From the IMG/VR virus record IMGVR_UViG_3300005965_000002, positions 194,581-258,580 of that record: 64,000 bases of DNA. The stretch is one strand, 5' to 3'. Below are positions 6,489 to 63,126 of the stretch, in pieces. The notes beneath the pieces were generated by a model. The model had not been told where the DNA came from and made no database searches. It saw nothing but the letters and a program-made list of their open reading frames with translations. A program made the translations under genes and the position numbers. Position 1 is the stretch's first letter. The number at the start of each line of letters is the position of its first letter.

Positions 6489-7913
6489 ATGGGATACAGG
6501 CGTGATAACATAAATAATCTTTCTAAGATCGATAGGGTTGATGATTTAATTGATTATCAGGATCTTCTGGAGGTTGCCAGCCAAACTCAGGAGCACAGAA
6601 GCCTCTATATCGAGCATCTTCGGGTAGAGCAACGTAGGTATGAAAAAAGGATTAAAGAGCTCACTCGGCAAAGGTCCCAACAAATTCTACTCAAGGATAT
6701 ACTTACAAAGACAGATAACCCTGAGGAGACTTTAAAAACTTATAGGCCATCGGTCTTCCACGTACCTAAGCCCGATCAGTCATTAGAGAAATTTGATTAC
6801 TCAAAGATTTATGGGCCTAATCCCTCCTTTGATATGAAATCTGTAGCTCAGGAAGAGATAAGAGACGTAATCCGAGCTATTGATATAGCTATTAGAGATA
6901 TTGATTATGAGCTATCCAAAACCGACTTATTTGAAAGACGGACTTCGTATATAATAAAAAAACTCCAGTCTCAGGAAAGTAGCCTAAATAAAGCTAAGCT
7001 TACTAGCGGGGCAAGGTATAAAAATATTGTTCAGAATATATCTGATATAAACAATGTGATCAGTAAGGTGAGTAGCTTAATATTTGTTTTAGAAGATATA
7101 CCTGAGAATTTTACCACTGAAAGTGAATCTAAGAAGTTCGAAACCGAGTTTAACCAAAAAACTTTTTCATATAATTTGGAGCGTAGGGCACTAATTGAAA
7201 TTTCTGAGGATTATATAGAAGATTACCCCGAGCAGACAGTAGCAACTACTTATATTATCGATTTAAGAGTTTACGTGGAATCTTTACCACAGCAACTCAC
7301 AGTCATAATGCCTCAGAAAGAAGAGGTATTAAAGACATTAAAAGTATTTTTAAAGAGAGCTATATCCGATAAGATCAGAATAAAAGGAAAACTTGAGGCT
7401 TTGGCTGGGGAAAAACATAATGCTGAGATAAATAAGAGGGTCAAAGATCTAAAGGATGAGCTTAATACGCAGTTAGCTACAGACGCTATAAATGATATAG
7501 TTGATAAGTCACTCACACAAGATGTAGCTCGCCAAGCCACACAGAGACTAAAAACAGCCACTGATAATAGAATTAGGCGCTTTCGAGAAAGACTAAAAAA
7601 GGCAAACACTGTAGAGCTCATAAATGATTTCAAGTATGAATATTTAAACTGGGGATCTCTTTTTAAGAGAACCGAGGAAAAGGATCGTACAGGTGATCAG
7701 ACTTTAGAAGAGTATTGGAGAGAAGAGCTTAGACAAAAATATGGAGGTGACATACCTTTTTGTGACGAGGTGCGTCTTCTGGACGGCAGCTTCGCTAAAA
7801 AGACAGATGTGATATTAGACTCAGAATCAGGCACATATATTAGGCGGCAAGATAAGAAAAATCAAGAAATTATAGATGAAAATCTGGCGAATGACCCTCG
7901 CCAGAGGATTTAA
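6489..7913 (+). CDS. Hypothetical coiled-coil protein
   Basis: Long charged helical ORF. ATG at 6489 follows GGAG (the track starts at 6474). Confidence 0.65.
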   Translation: MGYRRDNINNLSKIDRVDDLIDYQDLLEVASQTQEHRSLYIEHLRVEQRRYEKRIKELTRQRSQQILLKDILTKTDNPEETLKTYRPSVFHVPKPDQSLEKFDYSKIYGPNPSFDMKSVAQEEIRDVIRAIDIAIRDIDYELSKTDLFERRTSYIIKKLQSQESSLNKAKLTSGARYKNIVQNISDINNVISKVSSLIFVLEDIPENFTTESESKKFETEFNQKTFSYNLERRALIEISEDYIEDYPEQTVATTYIIDLRVYVESLPQQLTVIMPQKEEVLKTLKVFLKRAISDKIRIKGKLEALAGEKHNAEINKRVKDLKDELNTQLATDAINDIVDKSLTQDVARQATQRLKTATDNRIRRFRERLKKANTVELINDFKYEYLNWGSLFKRTEEKDRTGDQTLEEYWREELRQKYGGDIPFCDEVRLLDGSFAKKTDVILDSESGTYIRRQDKKNQEIIDENLANDPRQRI

Positions 7914-7925
7914 TTATCTACTAAT
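7911..7925 (+). promoter_or_regulatory. Candidate late promoter TAATTATCTACTAAT
   Basis: Motif recurs in intergenic gaps before structural genes (21181, 32569, 40420, 63112). Confidence 0.55.
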
Positions 7926-7940
7926 TAAAAGACCTTCCAT

Positions 7941-8690
7941 ATGTCACAAGATTTTAAAATACAGAATAGATGCGATCATAAGATAAATTGGGAGGAAGGA
8001 ACTCTTTCTTCTGATAGAAAACGCATAGATGTCACTTATCGAATAGCTTCTAAATCATCTGTTTCGTTACGAATAAATAATGTAGCTATTCCAACCTCGA
8101 ATTATAAAATAGTAAAAGACGTAACGGTAGTCGATACTGAAAAGCCTTTTTATATACTAATGAACAATAAAATAAGGCATAATAACCCTCTGGTCGAGGT
8201 AAAGTACGTAACTTTTTTAAATAGATGCCCAAAATGCCAGGGTACTAAATTTTTGGATGATATTGCTTATAGTTCATCTGGGGATATTACACAAGTAAAA
8301 GATGAATTTTTATTGTTACAAACAGTAGAGAAGTACATAGTTACAAATATAAGAAGTAACAAATTTCATTCTTGGATGGGAACTAACCTCCATGAATTAG
8401 TAGGTACAAAGATACTGGACATGGAATTACTACGGAATAAAGTTGTAGATGAAGTAAACTCGGCTATAGAAAAGCTAAAGGATATTCAGAGGCAGTTAGT
8501 CTCTACCGGAAGGCCGGTAAGTGCGGGTGAGCTTTTTGGTGAATTGATATCAGTAGACCTCACCCAGGATTTCGAAGATTTAAGCATAATATCAGTAACC
8601 GTAAGATTTACAGCTCAAAGCGGAAAAAGGCTAAACTATACGCAATTACTGGAGCTGGCAGATCTAAGGCAAAGGATTAACTTCTCATGA
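7941..8690 (+). CDS. Baseplate protein with CxxC and C-terminal gp25/GpW-like domain
   Basis: CPKC; LLLQTVEKYIVT...FHSWMGTNLHELVG...ISVTVRFTAQSG fits a gp25-like pattern; directly upstream of baseplate J. Confidence 0.6.
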   Translation: MSQDFKIQNRCDHKINWEEGTLSSDRKRIDVTYRIASKSSVSLRINNVAIPTSNYKIVKDVTVVDTEKPFYILMNNKIRHNNPLVEVKYVTFLNRCPKCQGTKFLDDIAYSSSGDITQVKDEFLLLQTVEKYIVTNIRSNKFHSWMGTNLHELVGTKILDMELLRNKVVDEVNSAIEKLKDIQRQLVSTGRPVSAGELFGELISVDLTQDFEDLSIISVTVRFTAQSGKRLNYTQLLELADLRQRINFS

Positions 8691-21180: not shown

Positions 21181-21195
21181 CCATGATCTATTAAT
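21181..21195 (+). promoter_or_regulatory. Candidate late promoter (core ATCTATTAAT)
   Basis: Intergenic match to the core of the recurrent motif. Confidence 0.45.
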
Positions 21196-21237
21196 ATTTT
21201 TCCCTTATCATTACATGCAGCGAATAGATGAGGGAAT

Positions 21238-31923: not shown

Positions 31924-32571
31924 ATGTTAAAAAGTAAAAAGAACACGATAAATGCTTCTTTAAAACCAACTATATCTAAGGGGACTGTTAGAATAAATGC
32001 GGGTTCCTTTGTATTTGATAATAATTGGATAAATTTTAGAGGCAAACTGTTTAAGCTAGATGACTATATAGGTAGGGTCTTAGCTCCGCCTAGGACAAGG
32101 TTTTTTAATGATCGAAATTACGCTTTCTATTTAGTTATTGGATTAGATAAAAATGGGGAGCTGACTTATTTAGAGGGTAACCAGGTAAAGTTTTCTTCTA
32201 TTAAGTCTGTACCAGTACCGTCTGTGATAGATATTATTCCTCTTGTGGGGCTTATTGTTATTCAGGATGGCTCTAGAGATCTAAACTTTGGCTACAAACC
32301 TTTGAATGATTCCAATGTCATATTTTTTTCTGGTGCCGGTAATGTCCTCGATAAAGATAAAAAGGGAATTCAGGGAGAATCAAATAGATCATATGGGTAT
32401 ACAGGGCTGTTGGGGGAGACAGGAATAGAGGGAGAGCGGGGCGCAAAAGGCTTGAGGGGTGAGACTGGAATAATTGGCCCTACTATTTATGGGGATCGGG
32501 GGGAAACCGGTACTAAAGGTATGACAGGAATTAACTGGAATATACATATTCCCTTTGAATTCTTTCTCTAA
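31924..32571 (+). CDS. Collagen-like protein (paralog of 32600 and probably 16567)
   Basis: Gly-X-Y run at 32365-32535; N-domain shares (L/F)FNxR and QDGS with the next gene. Confidence 0.8.
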   Translation: MLKSKKNTINASLKPTISKGTVRINAGSFVFDNNWINFRGKLFKLDDYIGRVLAPPRTRFFNDRNYAFYLVIGLDKNGELTYLEGNQVKFSSIKSVPVPSVIDIIPLVGLIVIQDGSRDLNFGYKPLNDSNVIFFSGAGNVLDKDKKGIQGESNRSYGYTGLLGETGIEGERGAKGLRGETGIIGPTIYGDRGETGTKGMTGINWNIHIPFEFFL

Positions 32572-32583
32572 TTATCTAATAAT
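32569..32583 (+). promoter_or_regulatory. Candidate late promoter TAATTATCTAATAAT
   Basis: Recurrent motif upstream of a structural gene. Confidence 0.55.
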
Positions 32584-32599
32584 AACTTTGGCTTAAAAT

Positions 32600-38700: not shown

Positions 38701-40422
38701 AATTTATTAGATCAGTACGGGCTCACTTTTAGTCCTGAATATCTATTGGACAAAGATAAGAATGTCATTCTTAATGATAAATATTTGGAAAAAGAATTAC
38801 CTGCAAATACTGTGCTGTATGAGGGCACTCCTCTTTTTATAGAAACATTCACAGATGACGGGCATTATAAGAGATTTATACTCCCTGATGGAGAAGATAC
38901 TTATGAGGAGGCTGATGAATACACTCACGACCTTAAGGCTGGATTTAGTATTATAGATCCAGATCAATCAGGATTCATCGATGAAAACCCTATTTGCGAA
39001 TATGATAAAAACGAAAAACTGAATTTTTATTCTGACCTCAAGATAGTTGAGTTTGATAATGGGGGCTATGACGCACATCTGGCATCCATTTCAGAAGGTA
39101 GCAGATCTCTACCTTTCTCTTTTTCATATGTGGATATCTATTATCCTAATAGAGAGCTCAGAATTAACGATTATCTGGATTATATAAATCTGCTTCCTTC
39201 AGAAATTGAGACAGGTAGAGCCCAGACATTAAACGGATCTAAGACCATCAAAGCCATAGATAAAAATTGGCTTACTCTCCATAGAGGTGATGCAATCACT
39301 TTTAAGGAAGTACCCATAACTGAATGGGATGATGATTCCAAAGAATACGTGACCACATATGAGGATGTAGTATATACTGTAGTTGAGATCATCGATTATC
39401 AAACAGTAAGGCTGCACACCAGTTTTAAACATAAAACGGGACGCTATGATTATCAGATAGTTAGAGATTCTGTGATTGCTGTGGACGTGTTGCTGCCGGG
39501 CGGTAACTATGTAGTGAATAACGGCGTAACAGGTAAGGTTGGAAATCTAAATAGAGAGCTCGTATTTAAAGAATCTACTGGGTTTGGCTATGGCTTACCA
39601 GAGTCCGTACTAAAAAATTTACCTGGATATTCAGGTGCTGGTTTTTCCTTGAATTTTCCGGATCCTGACCCCGATCCTTATCCTCGTAGCCCAGACAACC
39701 CTTATATTACAGGTTTACCCGCAGGATCTGAGCTATTAAGCTCTGAGATTATTAAATGGGATGGAAGTTCAGTCTATAATGTAACAGGTTCTCTGTCAGG
39801 ATTCACAGGACCAAGTGGGGCTGTTGATCTCGGTTTGACTGGTCCTACGGGATCTTATAACCCCCTAATAGTAACCGACGATGACAAATATTTTGTCCCA
39901 AGTGCTGTAACTGGTACATACGCCTCCTATAGTGAAGCAGAATACAGGGTACAATGGAGAGATTGGGATCAGGACTTAGTGCTTATTTCTTTTGGCGGGG
40001 GGACTGGTGCTGGTGGAGAAACCTCTCCTAGTGGTATTTTATTAGAAGATCCTATTAACATGACCGATGATATAGGGGACAGTATAAGAAGAAGTTATTG
40101 GGATCCTAATAAGTATAGAGCTGGAGAAACAGGTATTATTCATAATTACTATTTTGGAACATTATTAGAGATGTCTGAAGACGAGGACTCTACTGTAGAT
40201 ACTACTTTAAATACGGACGCTCTCATAGCGTTAGATAGCAATGAGGCTATGTATTTAGATTATCTCTATTTAAATGACCCCTATACTGGAATTAATAACG
40301 CCGTATCTGCTTTAAATTTAAATAGCGATACATATCCTCTCTATACTAGGTTCGTAAGAGAAATATTACACGATAACTCCCTTAAGGTCACAGAAATTAA
40401 AGAGTTCGGTAGAACGAGCTAA
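35719..40422 (+). CDS. Large baseplate wedge protein (P2 gpI-like N-terminus) with many appended modules
   Basis: LLRNLPSNYP...LYQILG...EYREYLLKIRNAYLGGS...LIRPAHVLY resembles gpI-type wedge proteins; internal duplicated modules. Confidence 0.65.
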   Translation: MRNISQISNQDRVGESRTDTGIEFQKNLREVTNNIQARLLRNLPSNYPRTTNTNLALLYKAIAEEIARLQVSLSNINLDQYHEGTRTKYLYQILGDLLFLGERSINEKLTDVEYREYLLKIRNAYLGGSGKDNLESSVSEILGLPVKLKELYLELRKPDTVYNLKDTNKIFFDILMDSVSASSNIGDLLEDLNFFISLIRPAHVLYDTRLIWTDEFKNNDQKCTFEYVTNPIAETVYDTEIAYVVTYDLKKLYKLESSGSGSGYGVITKIEGDTEKIILEDGKVLIYSSDTDYFEKDGSEVSSASLSDFSVGDPVEYSATKDSSSNSSVIKSDWSYSGTISDIDESLSIITLSDNSKIVYNSDTLFYTRDGNGEYRTFFSTIEIGDELVFKAEKFTSEFTFYNTPEEVKDNYYAQFDRTVRSKPYFQENVKKKLKTINNLSEGYHVINENGVAKVVKVDGSFYKFLNEKYYKEISVTRFDLFIDGVFKQELEYEEPEIVPSLSEIKSIFIDVYGYTEIIEPDSNWEIKKTTTKKYKEAQDGGSLMTTSDDSMHLCDRKGSCYLTPFYEDTRKYFTWPSLQLISGFIKIDYDTDEDGDNAEDKLIDGYSEDTTGKSTPAYFNISSDPNSYSMPSLPMFSAEGDLAEASDLVVYLDGLKVDNAISSVDPWTGEVTLNFLPPYYTTLRIDYYYAKRYPNPVQYREEFKTDIVDDEENVGGEFSIIPQNGVVKRLYWPYEISDPLMYGDSRDYNVNLFPILNREGHLADVDDIKVSVGYTVVAGTLEADEGSSSLTSTETNWDEVQDNDTVIIEAPNYLDQEIIYNINSVESSEEITIDANFGVDSGTYSYKIIRYVTVENAVESVRPLLGHVRINFLPPSGSIIKFDYYYTHFERKYRFVPDFVDAFSRTTDTAWVYNGSGYLLDAFYGPRFGYSHIYDQGVTGIQEPVIDFEKIKKIGYRYRAFMLSESSVLNSPETLILDGYEKYGTQASLKSNRNLLDQYGLTFSPEYLLDKDKNVILNDKYLEKELPANTVLYEGTPLFIETFTDDGHYKRFILPDGEDTYEEADEYTHDLKAGFSIIDPDQSGFIDENPICEYDKNEKLNFYSDLKIVEFDNGGYDAHLASISEGSRSLPFSFSYVDIYYPNRELRINDYLDYINLLPSEIETGRAQTLNGSKTIKAIDKNWLTLHRGDAITFKEVPITEWDDDSKEYVTTYEDVVYTVVEIIDYQTVRLHTSFKHKTGRYDYQIVRDSVIAVDVLLPGGNYVVNNGVTGKVGNLNRELVFKESTGFGYGLPESVLKNLPGYSGAGFSLNFPDPDPDPYPRSPDNPYITGLPAGSELLSSEIIKWDGSSVYNVTGSLSGFTGPSGAVDLGLTGPTGSYNPLIVTDDDKYFVPSAVTGTYASYSEAEYRVQWRDWDQDLVLISFGGGTGAGGETSPSGILLEDPINMTDDIGDSIRRSYWDPNKYRAGETGIIHNYYFGTLLEMSEDEDSTVDTTLNTDALIALDSNEAMYLDYLYLNDPYTGINNAVSALNLNSDTYPLYTRFVREILHDNSLKVTEIKEFGRTS

Positions 40423-40434
40423 TAATCTATTAAT
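40420..40434 (+). promoter_or_regulatory. Candidate late promoter TAATAATCTATTAAT
   Basis: Recurrent motif, followed by an 8-bp hairpin (40446-40466) and GAGGAG RBS. Confidence 0.55.
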
Positions 40435-40494
40435 CAAAAGTACATATATAGAGTGTATCTCTATATCTAAATTAAAATTTAAGTGAGGAGCATC

Positions 40495-46896: not shown

Positions 46897-46925
46897 TTTA
46901 AGTTCGTATTGCTGATCAGTATATT
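46897..46925 (+). promoter_or_regulatory. Sigma70-like promoter TTTAAG-17-TATATT for the replication operon
   Basis: 17-bp spacing; near-identical architecture at 58656-58684. Confidence 0.45.
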
Positions 46926-48734: not shown

Positions 48735-49420
48735 GCTGTCCTTACTGTAATGATGCAGGGTTTATAAATAAGATAAGAAAAACGAGAGATAGGCATGGAA
48801 ATGAAATGGAGAAGAACGCTTCTCTACCCTGTCTGTGCAGAATAAACCCCTCGATCAGTAAAAAATATAAGGTGCTCTCCGGCACCCCCGATGCTGTTCC
48901 TGCTGATATTAAAGAAGCAGTAAAAACTCTCGGGTTCAGGCACCTGTTGGTGGTAGGACCAGAGCAGCTCTTCCTATATGCTGTAAGGGCTTTCATTGCT
49001 TGCCCTCTATATTTTTCCTGGCGCTCTTTTATCATACTCAACGGCTATGAGATGATAAAAGATTTCCATAGTGCAGGAGCTCAAGAGGGGCGCAGCCTAA
49101 ATGATTTATTAGAATACGATCTTTTAGTACTTACATGTTTTGCTACTGCAAGTATGGCTCCTATGAAGGAAGCTGTGTATCAAGTCATAAGAGATAGGAT
49201 TGTACGAAATAAGCCGGTATGGATCTTTGCAGCTTCCGTACGAGATTTTGAGCTCAGCCAAGAATTTTCTAAGGATCTATTCGATGTAATGAAAAGAGCT
49301 CAATTCAAATCATTTAGTGTAGATAAGTTCAAATTTCAGCAGACAGTTTCAAGAACTGCCTACCACCAAGCATTGATCGCTCAAAAAAGGGAAGCTCAGG
49401 AAGACGCTGGGAGCTATTAA
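48731..49420 (+). CDS. DnaC/DnaI-like helicase-loader homolog with N-terminal Zn finger and degenerate ATPase motifs
   Basis: CPYC...PCLC; LLVVGP without GKT; YDLLVL without DD; VIRDRIVRNKPVWI; lies just upstream of DnaB. Confidence 0.55.
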   Translation: MSCPYCNDAGFINKIRKTRDRHGNEMEKNASLPCLCRINPSISKKYKVLSGTPDAVPADIKEAVKTLGFRHLLVVGPEQLFLYAVRAFIACPLYFSWRSFIILNGYEMIKDFHSAGAQEGRSLNDLLEYDLLVLTCFATASMAPMKEAVYQVIRDRIVRNKPVWIFAASVRDFELSQEFSKDLFDVMKRAQFKSFSVDKFKFQQTVSRTAYHQALIAQKREAQEDAGSY

Positions 49421-49463
49421 AATATTAGTATTTAGCTTCATTTTTCAGATTAACTGTTAAAAT

Positions 49464-50999: not shown

Positions 51000-51540
51000 G
51001 GATTTAAAGGCCGTAAAGGAGGAAATTAAAAAGCATGTTTCCCTAAAAGACATACTTATAGAGTCAGGGAAAATAAATGGTATATTACCCGAAGAGCAGT
51101 TCTCTTGTACATTCCATGGAGCAGATTTTAAAAAGAGTGCTAGATATTACGAAGAATCAGATACATGCCATTGTTTCACATGTCATAAGAGTTGGGACCT
51201 ATACTCTTATTTACAGCAGCGGGATACATTAACGTTTAAGCAGACGCTTAATTACCTATTAAAAACATACCGTATTGATATATCTAAGCTCCCCGATGCA
51301 ATCTCTACTAATACAAACCTACGTAAGCAAAATAAACAGGGTTATGACAATAAGAAATTATTCCTTTTTAAAGTAAAGGATATGATTTCTAGTTTTGAAA
51401 ACAAAATACCGGCTGAAAAATATATCCGGTTAGTTTACGCCTATATGGTTATCAAGTATTCATTCAAAGAAGAGAATGAATTTTTAGAGAACGCTCTAAA
51501 ATTAAAAAGAGCGGTGGAGAAGATCAGTAAGGAGATTTAG
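50989..51540 (+). CDS. Stand-alone CHC2 (DnaG-type) zinc-finger protein without TOPRIM
   Basis: CTFH...CHCFTC...FKQTLNYL; only 183 aa. Confidence 0.75.
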   Translation: MGYKDLKAVKEEIKKHVSLKDILIESGKINGILPEEQFSCTFHGADFKKSARYYEESDTCHCFTCHKSWDLYSYLQQRDTLTFKQTLNYLLKTYRIDISKLPDAISTNTNLRKQNKQGYDNKKLFLFKVKDMISSFENKIPAEKYIRLVYAYMVIKYSFKEENEFLENALKLKRAVEKISKEI

Positions 51541-55440: not shown

Positions 55441-55473
55441 GTAGCTTTCTGCTTCCATGTTTTGGAGGCATAA

Positions 55474-56106
55474 ATGGTACCTGTACGCACAGTAGAAGAT
55501 TTCCAAAAGAAAAATGAGGCTGAATTAAGATCATTCTTTACCTATAAAACCGGTATATATGATCCGGAAGTCCACGATGAGACTATTCAAGAATTTTACG
55601 TAAAACTGATTGAATCGAGAGCACTTGAGTCATTCGATCCCGAAAAAAGAAATATCGGTACGGAGGAAAGCTGTTTTAATCAGTACATAATAAGTCTTTT
55701 TTGCTGGATGCTTCCCGTATTAAAGAGGAGAAATCCTAATGTCAATCATCAACTAATGTCCCGGGTTGATATTGGTGAGACTACACCTAAAAGAGTAGAT
55801 ATCTGGGAACTGCTGAGCAAAAATTTTCAGCACACAAATTTTCAGGTAGAGGAATCTTTCAATACATCAGCCTTAGAGGATCAGCAGGAACAGGAAGCTC
55901 ATCAATTACTAGAGGATTTTATATCCTATATCCATCGTACTGAATCCCAAACTAAGGCTAGAAAATTTGAATTATATCTGAGAAGAAAAATGGAAGGGTG
56001 CAAGGCAACGGATATAGCTATTATGTTAGGAGTTTCCAATTATATGGTAACGATTATTAAGCAGGATATCCACAAAAGATTTAAGCATTGGATAAAAAAT
56101 GGATAA
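55474..56106 (+). CDS. Phage ECF-type sigma-70-like factor
   Basis: Region-2-like ETIQEFYVKLIE...FDPEK...FNQY; region-4 HTH LRRKMEGCKATDIAIMLGVS. Confidence 0.65.
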   Translation: MVPVRTVEDFQKKNEAELRSFFTYKTGIYDPEVHDETIQEFYVKLIESRALESFDPEKRNIGTEESCFNQYIISLFCWMLPVLKRRNPNVNHQLMSRVDIGETTPKRVDIWELLSKNFQHTNFQVEESFNTSALEDQQEQEAHQLLEDFISYIHRTESQTKARKFELYLRRKMEGCKATDIAIMLGVSNYMVTIIKQDIHKRFKHWIKNG

Positions 56107-56290
56107 GAAGGCTCTTAAAAGGCTTACATATATTCAGACGGTCTCGAAAATAAGAGAATTTCAGGAATTACTGAAAAAGTACCAAGCGAACGATAAAGAT
56201 TTGCCGCCTGATTTTAACTACAAAGACACAATATTAGGACTACATTTCTTACGAAATCGAATGCGTTCTTTAAAAAATAGAAAAAGTTAA
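56099..56290 (+). CDS. Small basic hypothetical protein
   Basis: 63 aa; start overlaps the upstream gene's end. Confidence 0.55.
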   Translation: MDKKALKRLTYIQTVSKIREFQELLKKYQANDKDLPPDFNYKDTILGLHFLRNRMRSLKNRKS

Positions 56291-56318
56291 TTACATTAGA
56301 TTAAGAAAAGGAGTAGTA

Positions 56319-57110
56319 ATGAAAATTACTTTTCTCGGCAGTGGGTCGGCATTTACCCTGAACAACTATCAGAGCAATATTCTCATTGAAGTAGGTGGGA
56401 AGAAAATGCTTTTTGATTGCGGCTCTGATATCCGGTTCTCCCTGAATGATAAAGGTCTTTCTGCCTTAGATATTGATGCAGTCTATATTTCTCACCTGCA
56501 CGCTGATCATATAGGCGGGTTAGAATATCTGGCTTTTGTGAGCTACTTTGGGAAGGTAATCAAAGGCGCTCCTAAAATCGTGCTGCTATGCCCACATAAC
56601 TTAATCGAACCTCTTTGGGAGAATTCTTTAAAAAATGGGTTGAGTTCGGTAAGTGATAGTGATACTGATATAAATGATTTTTTTACCATAGAACCTTTGC
56701 CCGTAAACGGCACCACTACCTTTAGGTGTTTTGGTGATAGAGGCTTGGATATGGTAGTAGTACCAACGATGCACTGTTTTGCTAATAAAAATGTTATGAA
56801 ATCCCACGGGCTTTTACTTAGTGTACCGAGAAGTAATAAAAAGGTATACATCACATCGGATACCCAATTTAGTCCTTATCAGACGGAAGCTGCGATGGAG
56901 AAAGCAGATGTGATTTTTCATGACTGCGAAGTGTCTCCTCAGAAAAGCCGGGTCCACGCAAACTACGAAGATTTAAAAAAGCTACCACCAGAAATCAAAA
57001 AGAAAATGTGGCTGTATCATTACAACGACTGCATTTTACCTAATGCTAGAGAAGATGGATTTCAGGGTTTTGTGATGAAGGGCCAGGCGTTCGATGATAA
57101 ATATCTTTAA
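56319..57110 (+). CDS. MBL-fold phosphodiesterase, Apyc1 (anti-Pycsar)-like
   Basis: LGSGSAF, FDCG, SHLHADHIGGLE, PLWENSLKNGL, SDT, IFHDC, VHANYEDLKKLP, MWLYHY; AGGAG RBS. Confidence 0.8.
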   Translation: MKITFLGSGSAFTLNNYQSNILIEVGGKKMLFDCGSDIRFSLNDKGLSALDIDAVYISHLHADHIGGLEYLAFVSYFGKVIKGAPKIVLLCPHNLIEPLWENSLKNGLSSVSDSDTDINDFFTIEPLPVNGTTTFRCFGDRGLDMVVVPTMHCFANKNVMKSHGLLLSVPRSNKKVYITSDTQFSPYQTEAAMEKADVIFHDCEVSPQKSRVHANYEDLKKLPPEIKKKMWLYHYNDCILPNAREDGFQGFVMKGQAFDDKYL

Positions 57111-57124
57111 CATTTGAGGCGGCT

Positions 57125-57497
57125 ATGATTACTGTTTACGTAGCAAGTTTACGTAGCAAGTCCGTACACCAGAGGAGATGTAGGTCAAAACGTAAAAGCA
57201 CAGCTTGATGTGGGCGATGAGTTAATGGATTTAGGTTATTGTCCTATCCTTCCTCTGCTTACTCACTTTCAGTATATCCATAAACCTCGTTGCTATGAAG
57301 ACTGGATGCAGGTAGATGAGGAGCTAGTCAGTAGAAGTGATGTTCTTCTTAGACTCCCCGGTGAGTCGCCCGGAGCGGATAGAGAGATAGCGCGAGCTAA
57401 ATCATTAGGAATACCTGTAGTGTATAGTGTCGAAGAATTAAAGGCTGCAAAAATCAAAGAACGATTTATACGCCAAATGAAATCCCCAGTATCCTAA
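57125..57497 (+). pseudogene. NDT-fold (DUF4406/DUF1937-like) gene frameshifted by a 13-bp tandem duplication
   Basis: Removing one GTTTACGTAGCAA copy restores MITVYVASPYTRGDV...SDVLLRLPGESPGADRE (119 aa); GAGG RBS before ATG 57125. Confidence 0.8.
57134..57161 (+). repeat. Perfect 13-bp tandem duplication (GTTTACGTAGCAA x2 + GT)
   Basis: Read directly from the sequence. Confidence 0.95.
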
Positions 57498-57520
57498 GAT
57501 CAGGAGACAAATAAGATTAT

Positions 57521-58654
57521 ATGGAAGATATAAATGTAGACGAACTGTTAGGCGTAGAAGAAGAAGTTTCAGCAAATCCGGATGTTTCAGCAGATGCTGA
57601 AAACTACATAATGAGTGAAATTGCTAGCGACGACTCATCAAAGAAGTTAGAAGAAGGGCTGGCTTTTTGGAATAGATCCTGCCGGGATTTATATATTGAT
57701 TTCCGCCAGACCAGTCTAGAGGCTAACGATGATGAAATGTGCCTCAAGTTTGACGATACAGATTTTTTCCCGAAGCCTCTTTATTTTAAGGTAAATCCGG
57801 AAGATCCTAAGAATCCTTTAATAATCCATGCCTGGAAACAATTTTGTAAAATTGTAGGTATCCCGGTCGGTTTTTTTATGGACGCTAGACCGGCCTTGAA
57901 AAAACAGATCTATGATACCTGGAAGGCTACGCTATCTGCTGACGAAAAAAAGGCTACCTGCATAGCTCGTATCAGAGATTCACAGGATTGTGCTATAATC
58001 CGGGCTATAGTACCCGATAACTTTTCTCCGCTACAGAATCATGAGATTATTAATATAATTAATCAAAGTATTGATTATAAGTTTTTCAGGTTAGAGGATG
58101 TAAAAGGTGACCAGAGAGATGATCTTATATTACATGCCCGGTATGTCTTTGGAGAAATTTTCCAGGTAGCAGGCCAAGAGGCATGCCTTGGATTCTCCGT
58201 AACAGCTTCCGAGTTAGGTGCCTGCCCTCTGAATATTGATTCCTTTCTATATCTGATGGAAAGCAAAACTGTATTTTTTGCTACCTACGGTAAAGAGTCA
58301 TTTTTTCAGACAAAATATGAGGGTGTACAGCCTAATGAGCTAAAAGAGCTTTTCCCTAAGTTGATCGAGCGTATCGAATCCGAAAGGGATGAAATTAAAG
58401 AGAGGGTAGAGAAGACCAATAAAGAAGTTGTTCCGATGGATGAGGCTGTAAAATTGAGGGACTACAAAAAAATACCTACTAAGTTCAAGAAGTCTCTCTT
58501 CAAAGAGGTAGCCGGTTGTGGGGATGATATGGGTACCCGCTTGGATTTTGCGCGGCATGTGGGGTTGATAGCAAAGGATTTTGATGTCCTCAAGCGTATA
58601 GACATAGAAAAAGCTGCTGGTAAGTATCTAAATTTGGTTTTTAGTAAGAAATAG
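57521..58654 (+). CDS. DUF932-like protein
   Basis: AWKQFCKIVGIP...IRAIVPDNFSPLQNHEII...GFSVTASELG...IDSFLY. Confidence 0.6.
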   Translation: MEDINVDELLGVEEEVSANPDVSADAENYIMSEIASDDSSKKLEEGLAFWNRSCRDLYIDFRQTSLEANDDEMCLKFDDTDFFPKPLYFKVNPEDPKNPLIIHAWKQFCKIVGIPVGFFMDARPALKKQIYDTWKATLSADEKKATCIARIRDSQDCAIIRAIVPDNFSPLQNHEIINIINQSIDYKFFRLEDVKGDQRDDLILHARYVFGEIFQVAGQEACLGFSVTASELGACPLNIDSFLYLMESKTVFFATYGKESFFQTKYEGVQPNELKELFPKLIERIESERDEIKERVEKTNKEVVPMDEAVKLRDYKKIPTKFKKSLFKEVAGCGDDMGTRLDFARHVGLIAKDFDVLKRIDIEKAAGKYLNLVFSKK

Positions 58655-58655
58655 A

Positions 58656-58684
58656 TTTAAATAATCATTTTAAAATGGTATATT
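58656..58684 (+). promoter_or_regulatory. Sigma70-like promoter TTTAAA-17-TATATT with extended -10 TG
   Basis: Intergenic, followed by AAGGAG RBS. Confidence 0.5.
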
Positions 58685-58697
58685 CTAAGGAGAAGTT

Positions 58698-59240
58698 ATG
58701 TCAGAGACAGGAATTCAAAAAGTGCTCGCTAAAGAATTTAGTAACTTCAATCTGAACCGTCTCTTTCAAGAGGCTGTGAAAAACATGAGCGATAAGGCTC
58801 CTTTTTCTATCGAGCCTTTTGAGTTTGAAGCAGACAAAAAGAGTTACATGATTACTCCTACCAGGGTTGATCATGAAGAGGTCATTAAAAAGGCAAATAG
58901 CTCATGTAAGGATTGTTATGGAAAAGGTTATTTCGTATCTAATATCCTAAAAACTAAGCTGCCAGATCCTTCCGTTTATCTTGAGATTAAACCAGAGCAT
59001 TCCATGCCGGAGACCCTTTCAGAGGAACAGCAAAAGATTTGGATGGAGCGAGAAGAGAAGCTCTATAAGGAAAGCAAGACATGGCGTCTAATGAACATAT
59101 GCCCATGTGCAATAAAAAGATACGTTAAGAATAAACCCAATATTATGTACAACAACACTCAGACACTTTTTATTGACTTCGATTATGACCTGATTGCAGT
59201 CGATAAAAAGGAAGATGCTGTGGATGAGAAAACCAGCTAA
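58698..59240 (+). CDS. Hypothetical Zn-finger protein
   Basis: CKDCYGKG...ICPC; strong RBS. Confidence 0.65.
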   Translation: MSETGIQKVLAKEFSNFNLNRLFQEAVKNMSDKAPFSIEPFEFEADKKSYMITPTRVDHEEVIKKANSSCKDCYGKGYFVSNILKTKLPDPSVYLEIKPEHSMPETLSEEQQKIWMEREEKLYKESKTWRLMNICPCAIKRYVKNKPNIMYNNTQTLFIDFDYDLIAVDKKEDAVDEKTS

Positions 59241-59252
59241 GGAGGTTTGATA

Positions 59253-59402
59253 GTGGTCAATATGACCAGAGCTGAAAAACGTAATGACCAATTTCAGCAG
59301 ATGTATAACGAGCTTGTTAAAGAAGGAAGAAAGCCTACAAAGGCATTAAAGGAAACTCGGAAGAAGTTTAACACTCGGAATATAGAAAAAAGGTTTGTAT
59401 AA
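59253..59402 (+). CDS. 49-aa basic protein not in the ORF track
   Basis: TAAGGAGGT RBS, GTG start, MVNMTRAEKRND...KRFV, TAATG overlap with the ligase start. Confidence 0.65.
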   Translation: MVNMTRAEKRNDQFQQMYNELVKEGRKPTKALKETRKKFNTRNIEKRFV

Positions 59403-61408
59403 TGGATAATTTGGACAAACTTCTTAAAAGGCTAGATGAGGCAGATAAGGCTTACTATGTAGATGGTGAGTCTATAATGAGTGATACTGCTTATGACCTT
59501 TTAAGAGATAAAGTCCTAAAGCAGTTGCCCCCTGATCACCCACGATTTAAAAAGGTAGGGCACGCAGCAGTAAGCTCCTGGCCTAAGGAAAAGCATACTA
59601 TCTTCATGGGCAGTCAGAATAAGGTAGCTACAGAGCAGGCTATCAGGGATTGGGTGACGGCTGTGATGAAGGACCTCGGTTTGTCTGAATGCCCAGAATT
59701 TATCCTTCAGCATAAAATTGATGGTTTTTCTCTTGAAGCCAAATATCTGGACAATAAATTGGAAAAAGCCGTAACCAGAGGAAATGGCATAGTCGGGGAA
59801 AACATACTGCAGAATGCCCAGCACTTTCGTTTTCTCCCGGGGCTGCTTCCTCTTGATAAGGAAGTAGTTGTGCGGGGAGAAGGTGTCCTCACGAAGGAAA
59901 ACTTTGAAGTAATTCAGAGTAATACTGGAGATCATTACAAAAACGGCAGGAATGCTGCAGCAGGTATAAGCCGTAGATATGATGGAGCCTACTCCGAGTT
60001 TGTCTCCTTTATAGCCTATGATATAAATGCTCAAGTAAAATACGAAACCGAAAAGATAGAGGTTTTGGATAAGCTTGGATTTCAGCCAGTAGTCACGTAT
60101 ACTGCTAAATCTATAGATGAAATAATTTCAATCTATAAGGATTATAAGGAGAGTAAAAGGGAAAAACTCCCTTACGGAATAGATGGTTTAGTGCTCAAGC
60201 TGAATGAGATTGAACTTCAGGAGAAGAGAGGTGTAAACCGAAACCGGCCCGAAGGGCAGATTGCTCTGAAGTTTGATACTGATCAAGCGATTACAACCGT
60301 TAAGAGTATACAGGTCCAGGTGGGCAGGACTGGTAAACTGACACCTGTAGCAATCCTGGAACCGGTAGATCTTATGGGTTCTACTGTCCAGAAGGCTACT
60401 CTTCACAATTTTGCCTATATTGATTCTAATTTTATCGGAGTTGGGGCAGAGGTTGTTGTTGAGAAGAAAGGCGATATCATTCCTCAGGTAGTAGATATAG
60501 CTGCTCCCGGCGATGATTATCAACGCATAACGGATTGCCCGTCTTGTGGGGGCAATCTAACCAACGATGGTGTGAATCTATGGTGTCGTAACCACGGTTG
60601 TAAGGAACGAGAGGTCAATAGGATTTCTTATTGGGCTAAGACAATAGATATAAAGGGCTTTTCAAATAAGTTCATAGAAAAACTTTGGGATGAGGAACGT
60701 ATCACTTCTGCCTCGGATCTCTATAAGCTTCAGCCGGATGACTTTTTGGGGTTAGATGGCTTTGGAGAGAAGAAGGTAAAGGGTTTTATAAAGGCACTGA
60801 AGAACACATCCGTAATGTACCTGGATACTTTTATTACTGCTCTAGGTATACCCACCTGTTCATCCTCTACTGCAGAAATTCTGATGAACAAGTTCGATAC
60901 TTGGGAAAATGTAAAGAAGATTTCTGTAGATGACTTGATACAGATTCCCGGATTTGCTCTTACTTCAGCGACAGCAATCTGCAATGGTATAAAAGACGTG
61001 TCCAGTATGGCTGATGATCTGCTGGAAGCAATTGAGATCAAAAAGAGGAAAACAGGAGCTCTTACAGGAAAGACCGTGTGTATCACAGGCAGTTTGACTT
61101 CTATGTCTCGTAACGAAGCCAAAGATCTCGTGGTAGAAAACGGAGGATCCTTTAAATCATCCGTAACAGCAGACCTGTCTTACTTAGTAACTAATGATCC
61201 TGATTCAGGTACTGGTAAAAATGCCAAAGCAGACAAGTATAATAATGCTGCGAAGGATAAAGGAGAAGAGCCTCCGATTAAGGTCATTAATGAAGAAGAG
61301 TTTTTACGCATAATTGGCTATACGACCGTACAGAAGGAAATAGAAGAACAAGAAGATAAAAAAGAAGATAAAGTCATACTGGAAGACATTAACCTTTTTG
61401 AGGAATAA
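59402..61408 (+). CDS. ligA: NAD-dependent DNA ligase
   Basis: KIDG, TRGNG, RGE, IDGLV, QVGRTGKLTP, KGDIIPQV, CPSC Zn finger, HhH and BRCT. Confidence 0.97.
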   Translation: MDNLDKLLKRLDEADKAYYVDGESIMSDTAYDLLRDKVLKQLPPDHPRFKKVGHAAVSSWPKEKHTIFMGSQNKVATEQAIRDWVTAVMKDLGLSECPEFILQHKIDGFSLEAKYLDNKLEKAVTRGNGIVGENILQNAQHFRFLPGLLPLDKEVVVRGEGVLTKENFEVIQSNTGDHYKNGRNAAAGISRRYDGAYSEFVSFIAYDINAQVKYETEKIEVLDKLGFQPVVTYTAKSIDEIISIYKDYKESKREKLPYGIDGLVLKLNEIELQEKRGVNRNRPEGQIALKFDTDQAITTVKSIQVQVGRTGKLTPVAILEPVDLMGSTVQKATLHNFAYIDSNFIGVGAEVVVEKKGDIIPQVVDIAAPGDDYQRITDCPSCGGNLTNDGVNLWCRNHGCKEREVNRISYWAKTIDIKGFSNKFIEKLWDEERITSASDLYKLQPDDFLGLDGFGEKKVKGFIKALKNTSVMYLDTFITALGIPTCSSSTAEILMNKFDTWENVKKISVDDLIQIPGFALTSATAICNGIKDVSSMADDLLEAIEIKKRKTGALTGKTVCITGSLTSMSRNEAKDLVVENGGSFKSSVTADLSYLVTNDPDSGTGKNAKADKYNNAAKDKGEEPPIKVINEEEFLRIIGYTTVQKEIEEQEDKKEDKVILEDINLFEE

Positions 61409-61409
61409 A

Positions 61410-61874
61410 ATGGGCAACTCTCTTATTAGTGTAGGTGATCTGAAAAGAGAAGAGTATAAAGATGAAATTATACTAACGAAGCATATAGTCTATTTTTGTA
61501 ACTGTTCCTGTATCGATCACCACTCAAGAATCCTGTTTTATAGGGAACTCAGTAAAAAGGGTTATGTTGCTCTCGATGATATCACATGGGAGTTTAACAT
61601 TACTCATTTAGTTGGTCCCAGGATTTGTTATACGACACCGAGCCACGTTCTGGAATTCTTTTCAGTAGCTATAAAGAAACTGTTTGCCAGAGTCGTAGCT
61701 GCCAAAAATATTTTACTCGGGAAACCTGTCCATTTTAATAGCGATATTTGCATAAATACAAAAGAAATGCGTGAAATAATGGATGCAGTGGGTGTCTGTA
61801 CTAAAGAACTGGATGAAGCTCAAGAAAAAATTGCCCAAGAGCTAAAACTTAAAAAAGAGAGTACTAATGTTTAA
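61410..61874 (+). CDS. Hypothetical protein
   Basis: ATG at 61410 after GAGGA; CNCSCxxH cluster. Confidence 0.6.
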   Translation: MGNSLISVGDLKREEYKDEIILTKHIVYFCNCSCIDHHSRILFYRELSKKGYVALDDITWEFNITHLVGPRICYTTPSHVLEFFSVAIKKLFARVVAAKNILLGKPVHFNSDICINTKEMREIMDAVGVCTKELDEAQEKIAQELKLKKESTNV

Positions 61875-62190
61875 AGCAGACACGATAGCCCGAATACATA
61901 AGGTCATTAGGCGTATGGTAAAGGATCACCCGGAATATGCAAGTACTTTAGAATTTGCGGATTTATTTAATACAGAAGACCCAGAAGATTATCAGAGAGT
62001 AAAAAGCGTAACAGATTATTTGAAAAGAAACCTGACGGACGAAGAGATCGAAGTCGCCGCTGAACAAGTTGCTATTAATATGTGCTCTATTTCTGAATTT
62101 GACTCCATTAAGGAGAAAGAAAAGGAATATGAGAAGTTTAAAATATATGTCCGGAATACTATATTATATGGACCCCCGGTGATAAAATAA
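61867..62190 (+). CDS. Hypothetical protein
   Basis: 107 aa; start overlaps the upstream gene's end. Confidence 0.6.
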   Translation: MFKADTIARIHKVIRRMVKDHPEYASTLEFADLFNTEDPEDYQRVKSVTDYLKRNLTDEEIEVAAEQVAINMCSISEFDSIKEKEKEYEKFKIYVRNTILYGPPVIK

Positions 62191-62205
62191 AAAGGAATAT
62201 AGAAT

Positions 62206-63102
62206 ATGTTATTAAAAGATTTAGTGGTATCAGAGTGTAACATTCGAGACGTCGATGTAGAGGTTTTAGATATTGAAGGTTTAAAAGATTCAATTGCATC
62301 TCAGGGCCTTATTAGTAAAATTATATTGAGACCTACTGCTGACGATAAGTATGAGATTATTGCCGGGCAAAGACGTTACTTAGCTCTAAAAGAAATCCAT
62401 GGAGAAGATTATGAGCTCCCAAAAGAATCATATAAGGTTTTTTATACACTCGATGATAGGGATGCAGTCCTGCTTTCTGTGTCGGAGAATACTCAAAGGC
62501 GAGAACTAAGCCCTTTTGAGATGAATAAGGCCGCTCTTAAATTGAACCAGGTAGTGGGGTTATCGGATAAGGATATAGCCAAATATCTTAATATTACCCC
62601 GTATAGATTAAAAAGAATTATCGCTTTGAGTGCCGATAAGAATAAGATGACTGAAGAAATCCGTGAAGAGCTTAAAAAACCTGATAACCAGGCTAAGTTC
62701 AGCGACGCCCATTGGGATAAACTAAAAAATGTGGAAGATAAAGAAACTATTAAAGATGTCTATGAACAGATTGTTGATAAATCCCTTCCTCCTAGAGATG
62801 TCCCGAAAATAATAGGGGCTATTGAAAAGGTCCGAAAGGCTGAAAATAACGCCACACAACCCAATGCCTATTGCTCTGGCAGTACTGACGACGGAGCACC
62901 CGACAACCCTGGGGGTGTAATCCAATATGCCCACAAAGGCGAGCTGTCTTTGGAAGAAAACGGTGACAATAAGATATTGCGAGTAAAAGGCCGGGGAGAA
63001 GATGAGGAAGTACCTATTGACCATTATCTCGAATACTTACGTCATCCTGAGAAATTTAAATGTACAGTTACATTTAGGCTAAAAGTAATTCCCCTTGATT
63101 AA
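62206..63102 (+). CDS. ParB/RepB/Spo0J-like protein
   Basis: LKDSIASQGLISKIILRP...YEIIAGQRRYLA...SENTQRRELSPFE, followed by an HTH. Confidence 0.85.
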   Translation: MLLKDLVVSECNIRDVDVEVLDIEGLKDSIASQGLISKIILRPTADDKYEIIAGQRRYLALKEIHGEDYELPKESYKVFYTLDDRDAVLLSVSENTQRRELSPFEMNKAALKLNQVVGLSDKDIAKYLNITPYRLKRIIALSADKNKMTEEIREELKKPDNQAKFSDAHWDKLKNVEDKETIKDVYEQIVDKSLPPRDVPKIIGAIEKVRKAENNATQPNAYCSGSTDDGAPDNPGGVIQYAHKGELSLEENGDNKILRVKGRGEDEEVPIDHYLEYLRHPEKFKCTVTFRLKVIPLD

Positions 63103-63111
63103 AGCCTCTCA

Positions 63112-63126
63112 TAATTATCTTTTAAT
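63112..63126 (+). promoter_or_regulatory. Candidate late promoter TAATTATCTTTTAAT
   Basis: Recurrent motif at the switch from replication genes back to a structural gene; this copy does not overlap a stop codon. Confidence 0.6.

What the first reader, a model, noticed from the sequence alone, without database searches (positions are those of the whole stretch)
7911..63126. Conserved upstream motif TAATWATCTWHTAAT marks structural genes; phage sigma-like factor is a candidate reader
Seen: TAATTATCTACTAAT (7911), ccATGATCTATTAAT (21181), TAATTATCTAATAAT (32569), TAATAATCTATTAAT (40420) and TAATTATCTTTTAAT (63112). These occupy the larger intergenic gaps before structural genes, and I did not see the motif before replication genes. 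In three copies the first TAA is the upstream stop codon, but not at 63112. Known: T4-like late promoters are single short elements read by a phage sigma (gp55). Inference: a distinct late-promoter consensus, possibly read by the ECF-like protein at 55474-56106.
Basis: partly seen in the sequence, partly recalled or inferred. Interest (0 to 1): 0.65.

Follow-up and report, generated by a model that had tools for sequence, protein, structure and literature searches.

The report
Phage promoter motif for virion genes
A 16-base signal (TAATWATCTWTTAATA) in front of tail, baseplate and other genes of an uncultivated huge phage is most likely a phage-specific promoter class, conserved in related phages, and a divergent phage sigma-like protein is a plausible but unproven reader.

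Summary
The window is the last 64 kb of a 258,580-bp phage contig, estimated 55% complete, from a hypersaline-lake metagenome.

**The motif.** It is a sharp 16-bp block, TAATWATCTWTTAATA, with about 40 copies in the contig.
- 39 copies lie in the 6% of non-coding DNA, against 0.75 expected.
- 37 of 42 point the same way as the next gene, a median of 41 nt before its start.
- There is no -35 element.
- The motif recurs at orthologous positions in relatives whose GC content ranges from 39% to 61%.

**A second class.** A sigma70-type motif, TTTAAA-N17-GTATATT, precedes tRNA, NAD-salvage and replication genes.

Its interpretation is partly supported.
- The motif heads tail-sheath, tail-fibre and baseplate operons. 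It also heads homing endonuclease genes, a ribonucleotide reductase gene and many unknown genes.
- The 210-aa protein is sigma70/ECF-like by fold, language-model neighbours and a sub-cut-off NCBIfam hit.
- Nothing ties that protein to this motif. The phage also encodes an RpoD-like sigma, a paralogue of the 210-aa protein, and a protein with only a sigma region 4 domain.
- No transcript data exist.

This is a new member of a known kind: a phage sigma and phage promoter cascade.

The parts
7911..7926 (+). Class L motif copy TAATTATCTACTAATT. Its TAA is the stop codon of the upstream ORF. The downstream ATG (249-aa gene, then a baseplate-wedge gene) lies 14 nt away with no Shine-Dalgarno sequence.
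   Evidence: The motif and its 13-14 nt spacing to the ATG are kept in G001, G002 and G005.
21181..21196 (+). Degenerate class L copy CCATGATCTATTAATA, 41 nt before a gene for a PKD-domain protein.
32569..32584 (+). Class L copy TAATTATCTAATAATA. Its TAA is the upstream stop codon. It lies 15 nt before the ATG of a collagen/PKD tail-fibre gene.
40420..40435 (+). Class L copy TAATAATCTATTAATC, 47 nt before a gene related to baseplate-wedge proteins (phrog_5417).
   Evidence: Orthologous copies are present in G001 and G002.
63112..63127 (+). Class L copy TAATTATCTTTTAATG between the ParB gene and an unknown gene, 56 nt before its ATG.
   Evidence: The orthologous ParB-to-next-gene spacer keeps the motif in five relatives with 41-61% GC.
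57808..57823 (+). Matrix hit TAAGAATCCTTTAATA inside the 377-aa ORF. It may be chance or an internal promoter.
   Evidence: Not followed further.
46897..46925 (+). Class E, sigma70-type promoter-like site TTTAAG-N17-TATATT with a G just before the -10 element. It heads the operon running helicase, DnaB, DNA polymerase, P0001.
58656..58684 (+). Class E site TTTAAA-N17-TATATT, 13 nt before the 180-aa gene that precedes the DNA ligase gene.
55474..56106 (+). P0001, a 210-aa divergent two-domain sigma70/ECF-like protein.
   Evidence: It sits next to the polymerase gene in G001, G002 and G005 too.
56099..56290 (+). 63-aa ORF overlapping the end of P0001. In five GC-rich relatives its homologue is fused in frame to the P0001 orthologue, which makes it a likely partner.
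63130..63154 (.). Perfect palindrome TAATTATCTA-cgata-TAGATAATTA built from the 5' half of the motif. It starts after a 2-nt gap from the copy at 63112 and may be a gene-specific operator or a 5'-UTR hairpin.
   Evidence: The arrangement is unique in the contig.

Best explanation
The motif is the core of a phage-specific promoter class, called class L here. It is a single 16-bp block, TAATWATCTWTTAATA, with no -35 element. Transcription would start a few bases downstream.

Class L drives the virion (tail sheath, tail fibre, baseplate) operons. It also drives a set of other genes, notably the genes that lie antisense to the early arm.

A second class, class E (TTTAAA-N17-GTATATT), is sigma70-like. 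It drives tRNA, NAD-salvage and replication genes, including the operon that encodes the sigma-like protein P0001.

The inferred mechanism has two steps:
1. Host RNA polymerase, with a host or phage RpoD-like sigma, reads class E.
2. A phage factor made from a class E operon then redirects the core enzyme to class L.

P0001, possibly together with the adjacent 63-aa protein, is the leading candidate for that factor.

**Shown:** the motif's statistics, orientation, spacing and conservation; the existence of two classes; the sigma-like nature of P0001.

**Inferred:** that the motif is a promoter, its timing in infection, and who reads it.

My odds are about 0.8 that it is a promoter element, about 0.6 that a phage-encoded specificity factor on host core enzyme reads it, and about 0.35 that P0001 is that factor.
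For: **Statistics.** 39 intergenic hits against 0.75 expected, and 3 in about 243 kb of coding DNA. Nine of nine exact copies outside the window are intergenic.

**Orientation and spacing.** 37 of 42 copies are co-oriented with the next gene. The median distance to the start codon is 41 nt, with 14 of 33 distances falling at 37-47 nt.

**Antisense genes.** Seven plus-strand genes embedded in the minus-strand left arm need promoters of their own. These are the genes at 3164, 6533, 13394, 19718, 24393, 46052 and 67986. Each has a copy 25-72 nt upstream, often back to back with a leftward class E site.

**Shape.** Information content is confined to 16 columns. There is no -35 element and no separate -10 element.

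**Independent test.** The matrix trained on this contig was run on relatives with about 40-57% protein identity.
- G005: 12 of 15 hits fall in its 3.4% non-coding DNA, all co-oriented, median distance 46 nt.
- G001: 4 of 5 hits are intergenic.

**Orthologous spacers.** They keep the motif while the flanking sequence diverges. This holds in relatives up to 61% GC, where TAAT, C at position 8 and T at position 15 are invariant.

**Functions.**
- Class L precedes tail sheath, collagen-like tail fibre, and baseplate and fibre genes.
- Class E precedes PRPP synthetase, NAMPT, a nucleotidyltransferase, tRNAs, and the operon running from the helicase gene through the DNA polymerase gene to P0001.

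**P0001.**
- Its top Foldseek PDB hits are almost all sigma factors.
- The sigma region 4 match has Z about 9 and rmsd 1.7-2.4 A over 70-72 residues.
- The nearest ESM Atlas clusters are sigma70 family, score 0.96.
- TIGR02937 sigma70-ECF matches over the full length at E 3.5e-6.

**No phage RNA polymerase.** None was detected in this contig or in five relatives.
Against: - No transcription start data exist. All eight sequencing runs that hold the phage are DNA.
- The contig is only about 55% of the genome, so an unseen phage RNA polymerase or another factor cannot be excluded.
- P0001 scores below every curated cut-off: 26.7 bits against 42.9 for TIGR02937, and no Pfam hit at E 0.01.
- A two-domain sigma normally needs -35 and -10 elements about 17 bp apart, which a 16-bp block cannot supply.
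- Class E is conserved next to P0001 orthologues as well. P0001 could equally read class E.
- Three other sigma-related proteins are encoded.
- Class L also heads non-structural genes, so calling it 'late' is an assumption.
Confidence: 0.6

Rival explanations
1. The block is a composite. Its 3' TAATA(W) is a -10 element read by the host primary sigma or the phage RpoD-like sigma. Its 5' TAATWATCT is the site of a phage activator or appropriator that replaces -35 recognition, in the logic of T4 MotA/AsiA or of extended -10 promoters. The 221-aa protein with only a sigma region 4 domain could be that factor.
For: - T and A at the positions equivalent to -12 and -11 are invariant.
- The 5' half is the more conserved half across GC-rich relatives, while the 3' half drifts towards TATTC, which resembles the class E -10 element.
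- The 5' half occurs on its own as a perfect palindrome at 63130-63154, as expected of a site for a dimeric DNA-binding protein.
- The phage encodes an RpoD-like sigma whose TRERVRQI stretch resembles the -35-reading helix of RpoD (my reading of the sequence; domains). It also encodes a protein with only a region 4 domain.
Against: - The position equivalent to -7 is not conserved (A 14, T 19, C 6, G 1), yet primary sigmas depend on T at -7.
- The activator block would abut the -10 element at -23 to -15, unlike known MotA-type sites centred near -30.
- Inverted half-sites near motif copies are not enriched (4 of 42 against about 2 expected).
Confidence: 0.17
2. Class L is read by a phage-encoded RNA polymerase, either single-subunit or phiKZ/AR9-like multisubunit, whose genes lie in the missing 45% of the genome.
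For: - The architecture is a contiguous, AT-rich, highly conserved block with no -35 element. That resembles the AR9/phiKZ virion-polymerase promoters (AAATATATATTAT-6N-G, PMC5312081) and T7-type promoters.
- The contig is estimated at 55% complete.
Against: - No Rpb2_6, Rpb1_2 or T7-type polymerase domain was found in 258 kb of this phage or in 535 kb of five relatives.
- The T7-type search had no positive control, which weakens that part.
- The phage carries four sigma-related genes, which argues for use of the host core enzyme.
- In AR9 the extended AT-rich block marks the early promoters, which the virion polymerase must read, not those of virion genes (PMC5312081).
Confidence: 0.1
3. The motif is not a promoter. 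It could be an RNA-level signal (a processing or translation-control site in polycistronic transcripts), or a DNA site for another process such as nucleoid organisation or replication.
For: - Three window copies overlap the stop codon of the upstream gene, with no terminator between the genes. Read-through transcripts would therefore carry the motif.
- Two genes start only 14-15 nt after it with no Shine-Dalgarno sequence.
Against: - Copies stand in front of isolated antisense genes, which must have promoters of their own, and no other conserved element is found there.
- Several copies directly follow terminator-like hairpins with T-runs.
- The RNA version has no evident structure of its own (my reading of the sequence; no fold was run).
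- The strict orientation and the roughly 40-nt spacing fit a promoter plus a 5' UTR.
Confidence: 0.06

Closest known systems
T4 late promoters (TATAAATA) read by gp55 with gp33 and the gp45 clamp
   Same: Both are single AT-rich elements without a -35 element in front of virion genes. Both rely on a small, divergent, phage-encoded sigma-family protein. A small partner protein is a possible further parallel, with the 63-aa ORF here in the place of gp33.
   Different: The consensus is unrelated and twice as long (16 bp against 8). P0001 has a sigma region 4-like domain, which gp55 lacks. P0001 matched no family annotated as a sigma factor in PHROGs. No link to a sliding clamp has been shown.
phiEco32 gp36 middle/late promoters (tAATGTAtA, start site 6-8 bp downstream) with gp79 (PMC8948821, PMC12276001)
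   Same: An ECF-like phage sigma reads a single-element promoter in front of middle and late genes, early genes use sigma70-type promoters, and a small phage protein assists the phage sigma. The gp79-dependent open complex (PDB 9m7y) appears among the fold matches of P0001.
   Different: gp36 lacks homology to region 4, which explains its single element, whereas P0001 keeps a region 4-like domain. The motif here is 16 bp rather than 9, with two TAAT repeats 11 bp apart. P0001 shows no sequence similarity to gp36 beyond membership of the superfamily.
SPO1 gp28 and gp33-34 sigma cascade, and phage 7-11 gp47 (GTAAtg-16-aCTA, PMC8948821)
   Same: Successive phage sigmas redirect host core polymerase to phage-specific promoter classes.
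   Different: Those promoters are bipartite, with a -35-like and a -10-like element 16-18 bp apart. Class L has no upstream element.
AR9/phiKZ virion-polymerase early promoters (AAATATATATTAT-6N-G; PMC5312081) and T7-type promoters
   Same: They are contiguous, AT-rich, highly conserved blocks of 13-23 bp next to the start site, repeated many times in a large phage genome.
   Different: They are read by phage RNA polymerases, and none was found here. The phiKZ-type blocks mark early genes rather than virion genes.

Membership tests
Promoter (cis-acting transcription start signal) | Strongly enriched in non-coding DNA relative to composition | tested here: met
   39 hits against 0.75 expected in intergenic DNA, and 3 in about 243 kb of coding DNA. 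Nine of nine out-of-window exact copies are intergenic.
Promoter (cis-acting transcription start signal) | Co-oriented with, and at a characteristic distance from, the downstream gene, including genes that need a promoter of their own | tested here: met
   37 of 42 copies are co-oriented, at a median of 41 nt. All seven well-supported antisense genes of the left arm have a copy.
Promoter (cis-acting transcription start signal) | Conserved at orthologous positions while flanking sequence diverges | tested here: met
   Alignments A3, A4 and A5. The matrix transfers to G005 and G001.
Promoter (cis-acting transcription start signal) | Primary transcript 5' ends just downstream; activity lost on mutation | not testable with these tools
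   No RNA run holds the phage.
Sigma70-type bipartite promoter | -35 element 16-18 bp upstream of a -10 hexamer | tested here: not met
   No information content outside the 16-bp block. Class E sites in the same genome do meet this feature.
T4-type late promoter with gp55 | TATAAATA-like 8-bp element and a gp55-family factor | tested here: not met
   The consensus is TAATWATCTWTTAATA. P0001's only PHROG match is phrog_11138, of unknown function, at E 0.002.
Sigma70 family, ECF-like two-domain architecture (for P0001) | Score above the curated family cut-off | tested here: not met
   TIGR02937 scores 26.7 bits against a cut-off of 42.9, at E 3.5e-6 over the full length. No Pfam hit at E 0.01. 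The G005 orthologue hits Sigma70_r2 at E 0.0058.
Sigma70 family, ECF-like two-domain architecture (for P0001) | Sigma region 2-like helical domain plus sigma region 4 helix-turn-helix fold | tested here: met
   AF2 model with pLDDT 75. Nearly all of the top 50 Foldseek hits are sigma factors, aligned over both domains. Region 4 match Z about 9, rmsd 1.7-2.4 A. Atlas neighbours are sigma70 clusters at 0.96. Caveat: Z below about 13 is common for helical proteins.
Sigma70 family, ECF-like two-domain architecture (for P0001) | Binds core RNA polymerase and confers promoter specificity | not testable with these tools
Phage-RNA-polymerase promoter (T7-like or phiKZ-like) | Phage-encoded RNA polymerase present | tested here: inconclusive
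   No PF00562, PF00623 or PF00940 match in this contig or in five relatives. All records are fragments, and PF00940 had no positive control.

The most novel reading that the evidence does not exclude
P0001 and the adjacent 63-aa protein, which are separate here and fused in GC-rich relatives, form a previously undescribed clade of megaphage sigma factors. This factor would recognise a 16-bp single-block promoter in a non-canonical geometry, with the region 4-like helix-turn-helix reading the TAATWATC half immediately next to the -10-like TAATA half. The pair would be conserved across huge phages from 39% to 61% GC.
Probability: 0.25. Interest if true: 0.55.

Novelty: new member of a known kind. 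Interest (0 to 1): 0.4.

Why it matters
Huge phages are known almost only from metagenomes, and nothing is known experimentally about how they programme transcription. This contig offers several testable pieces:
- two cleanly separable promoter classes;
- about 40 copies of a 16-bp element;
- four sigma-related genes;
- a candidate sigma and partner pair supported by a gene fusion in relatives.

Together these give a testable regulatory map and a set of compact orthogonal promoter parts. They also help annotation: genes behind class L copies can be provisionally grouped with the virion genes even when they have no homologues.

The principle itself, a phage sigma redirecting host polymerase to a phage-specific late promoter, is textbook.

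Tried and rejected
- **Generic sigma70 and terminator scan of 44001-64000.** It found fewer promoter-like sites than in shuffles (41 against 54.9). Only the genome-specific class E definition is informative.
- **Search for a third promoter class.** Sixty unassigned upstream regions yielded only T-runs and Shine-Dalgarno words.
- **Inverted half-sites next to motif copies.** Not enriched: 4 of 42 against about 2 expected.
- **Major capsid gene.** Pfam Phage_capsid and Gp23 gave no hit, so I could not test whether the capsid gene carries the motif.
- **Locus search with alignment A1.** The alignment was too divergent. P0001 alone and alignment A2 recovered only the relatives already known in IMG/VR.
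- **GenBank phages.** No close relative: the ligase is at most 31% identical.
- **Antennapedia homeodomain.** Weak profile hits of the P0001 helix-turn-helix (E 0.39-1.2) are not significant. I draw nothing from the coincidence with TAAT.
Full report
**Context**

The window is bases 194581-258580 of a 258,580-bp linear IMG/VR virus record. CheckV estimates it at 55% complete. GC content is 38.6%. The standard genetic code gives long ORFs that cover 94% of the contig. The runs that hold the contig are hypersaline-lake and microbial-mat metagenomes, all DNA. GenBank phages contain no close relative.

The contig has two arms:
- a left arm, about 0-94 kb, of mostly minus-strand small genes and 37 minus-strand tRNA genes;
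- a right arm, 95-258 kb, almost entirely plus-strand.

The window runs as follows:
- 1-46,800: giant baseplate, tail-fibre, PKD and collagen-like genes.
- 46,971-55,440: a helicase, a DnaB-like helicase and a DNA polymerase.
- 55,474-56,106: the 210-aa protein P0001.
- 56,319-57,110: an Apyc1-like metallo-beta-lactamase hydrolase.
- Further on: an NAD-dependent ligase and ParB.

**Observation**

The four exact copies and the degenerate fifth copy are at the stated coordinates. No exact copy is expected by chance.

There it finds nine more copies, all intergenic.

Iterating a position matrix sharpens the element to 16 bp, TAATWATCTWTTAATA, with about 40 copies.
- Information content is confined to those 16 columns.
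- There is nothing at -35 distance and no separate -10 hexamer downstream.
- The only other signal is a faint YYTT 7-10 nt after the block.

Against a first-order Markov model of the AT-rich (66% AT) intergenic DNA, 39 hits are observed where 0.75 are expected, with a maximum of 4 in 300 simulations. About 243 kb of coding DNA holds only 3 hits, one of which is probably upstream of a mis-called start codon.

**Anatomy**

Of 42 hits, 37 point the same way as the next gene. The distance from the end of the block to the start codon has a median of 41 nt, and 14 of 33 distances fall between 37 and 47 nt.

Copies occur on both strands. Seven plus-strand genes are embedded in the minus-strand left arm and therefore need promoters of their own. 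These are the genes at 3164, 6533, 13394, 19718, 24393, 46052 and 67986. Each has a copy 25-72 nt upstream. Several of these copies stand back to back with a leftward site of the other promoter class.

In the window's structural module the copies recur every 8-13 kb, at gene junctions without terminators. They look like internal operon promoters.

Two structural genes, at 7941 and 32600, begin only 14-15 nt after the block and have no Shine-Dalgarno sequence. For the 7941 gene that spacing is conserved in three relatives. If the block is a promoter, these messages are nearly leaderless. This is an inference.

**A second class**

K-mer enrichment reveals a second motif, TTTAAA (or TTGAAT)-N17-GTATATT, a sigma70-type bipartite promoter. 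About 30 intergenic copies exist. I call it class E.

Class E precedes tRNA genes, PRPP synthetase, NAMPT, a nucleotidyltransferase and regulators. It also heads the early operon that holds the phage's RpoD-like sigma. In the window it precedes two units:
- the operon running helicase, DnaB, polymerase, P0001, at 46897-46925;
- the unit containing the ligase gene, at 58656-58684.

No third class emerged from the unassigned upstream regions.

**What lies behind class L**

Genes with a recognisable function behind class L copies fall into two groups.
- Virion genes: the tail sheath, a 1,546-aa collagen-like tail fibre, and the window's baseplate, fibre and PKD genes.
- Other genes: two HNH endonucleases, the ribonucleotide reductase large subunit with an HNH insert, and a rubrerythrin-like protein.

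Most of the remaining genes are unknown. 'Structural genes' is therefore too narrow. 'A transcription class that includes the virion genes' fits better. Calling it late is an assumption.

**Comparative evidence**

IMG/VR and metagenome searches retrieved relatives with 33-67% protein identity.

The matrix trained on this contig was applied unchanged to two of them:

| Relative | Contig size | Non-coding | Hits | Intergenic | Co-oriented | Median distance |
|---|---|---|---|---|---|---|
| G005 | 141 kb | 3.4% | 15 | 12 | 12 of 12 | 46 nt |
| G001 | 63 kb | 1.7% | 5 | 4 | 4 of 4 | too few |

Upstream of the orthologues of the 7941 and 40483 genes, the block is an island of identity in otherwise diverged spacers.

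The spacer between ParB and the next gene keeps the block in six phages whose GC content ranges from 39% to 61%. TAAT, the C at position 8 and the T at position 15 are invariant. The block lies 41-56 nt from the start codon and often follows a terminator-like hairpin. In the GC-rich members the 3' half drifts from TTAATA towards TTATTC or GTATTC, while the 5' half is retained.

**The candidate reader**

P0001 has no Pfam hit at E 0.01. Several independent lines nevertheless make it sigma-like:
- NCBIfam TIGR02937 (sigma70-ECF) aligns over its full length at E 3.5e-6, 26.7 bits, below the 42.9-bit cut-off. Its 179-aa paralogue (contig 50081-50620, minus strand) gives E 6e-6.
- A profile of the family hits LuxR/GerE-type helix-turn-helix domains in the PDB.
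- The AF2 model (pLDDT 75) retrieves sigma factors almost exclusively, aligned across both domains.
- The C-terminal 80 residues superpose on sigma region 4 at Z about 9, rmsd 1.7-2.4 A.
- Its ESM Atlas neighbours are sigma70-family clusters.

The gene directly follows the DNA polymerase gene in G001, G002 and G005 as well, inside a class E operon. That is the position expected of a factor that switches on a later class.

A 63-aa ORF overlaps the end of P0001. Its homologue is fused in frame to the P0001 orthologue in five GC-rich relatives, which suggests the two proteins work together. This recalls gp55 with gp33, or gp36 with gp79.

**Limits**

Nothing links P0001 specifically to class L.
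- The phage also encodes an RpoD-like sigma, the paralogue, and a 221-aa protein with only a region 4 domain.
- The RpoD-like sigma keeps a TRERVRQI stretch that I read, from the sequence, as the canonical -35-reading helix of RpoD.
- The class E -10 element, TAGTATATT, is conserved next to P0001 orthologues even at 61% GC.
- A 16-bp block cannot span the usual -35 to -10 distance of a two-domain sigma.
- No phage RNA polymerase domain was found here or in the relatives, but every record is a fragment.

**Comparison with known systems**

The closest parallels in how it works are three:
- T4 late promoters, a single element read by gp55. This rests on established knowledge.
- The single-element tAATGTAtA promoters of phiEco32, read by the ECF-like gp36 and assisted by gp79 (PMC8948821, PMC12276001).
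- The extended AT-rich virion-polymerase promoters of AR9 and phiKZ, which resemble class L in shape (PMC5312081).

Class L differs from all of them in sequence and in length (16 bp, with two TAAT repeats one helical turn apart). It also differs in that its candidate sigma retains a region 4-like domain. Huge phages are known to encode sigma70 homologues (PMC7162821). In the papers I searched I found no description of promoter classes defined for them.

**Verdict**

The motif is real, highly significant, and conserved across a clade. It is best read as a phage-specific single-block promoter class.

This is a new member of a known kind, of moderate interest.

Noticed in passing
G000 contig 2056-59314, outside the window; the tRNA with anticodon CUA is at 30968-31041 (-): There are 37 tRNA genes, all on the minus strand of the left arm. 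One has a CUA anticodon (amber-suppressor type; ARAGORN labels it tRNA-Pyl) and sits 11 nt behind a class E promoter. TAG still ends 53 of 265 called genes, and ORF lengths show no sign of TAG recoding in this fragment.
   Followed up: partly
window 56099-56290 (+): A 63-aa ORF overlaps the end of the sigma-like gene. Its homologue is a separate small ORF in G001 and G005 and is fused in frame to the sigma-like protein in five GC-rich relatives (L194, L195, L199, L200, L201). This gene fusion suggests the two proteins act together.
   Followed up: partly
window 51541-55440 (+): The DNA polymerase (1,299 aa) carries about 410 residues, roughly 585-996, that are absent from the G001, G002 and G005 orthologues. 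This is probably an intein or another insertion. Outside the window, the ribonucleotide reductase large subunit (contig 67986-71519) has an HNH insert, and a 510-aa ORF (151773-153305) has an intein splicing domain.
   Followed up: no
window 63130-63154: A perfect palindrome, TAATTATCTA-cgata-TAGATAATTA, is made of the 5' half of the motif and starts after a 2-nt gap from the copy at 63112. The orthologous spacers in relatives keep a TATAG(TCGG) element 7-16 nt after the motif. This may be a gene-specific operator or a leader structure.
   Followed up: partly
window 46897-46925 and 58656-58684; about 30 further sites in the contig: A second, sigma70-type promoter class, TTTAAA-N17-GTATATT, lies in front of tRNA, NAD-salvage and replication genes. 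Its -10 region, TAGTATATT, is conserved in relatives with up to 61% GC.
   Followed up: yes
G000 contig 4855-5715 (-), 50081-50620 (-), 103173-103838 (+): Three further sigma-related genes are present: an RpoD-like sigma with regions 1.2, 2, 3 and 4, in a class E operon just downstream of a predicted tRNA-Ala; a 179-aa paralogue of P0001; and a 221-aa protein with only a sigma region 4 domain in its N-terminal half.
   Followed up: partly
window 56319-57110 (+): A metallo-beta-lactamase-fold hydrolase matches the anti-Pycsar Apyc1 family (97 bits against a cut-off of 50). It is a candidate counter-defence gene, two genes downstream of P0001.
   Followed up: no
window 7941 and 32600 gene starts: Two structural genes start 14-15 nt after the motif with no Shine-Dalgarno sequence. 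For the 7941 gene the spacing is conserved in G001, G002 and G005, which suggests nearly leaderless messages.
   Followed up: partly
G000 contig 100318-104476: This stretch has unusually long ORF-free gaps of about 1,350, 930 and 640 nt around the gene for the region 4-only protein. A class L copy at 104102 lies 358 nt from the next called gene. Small genes or non-coding RNAs may have been missed.
   Followed up: no
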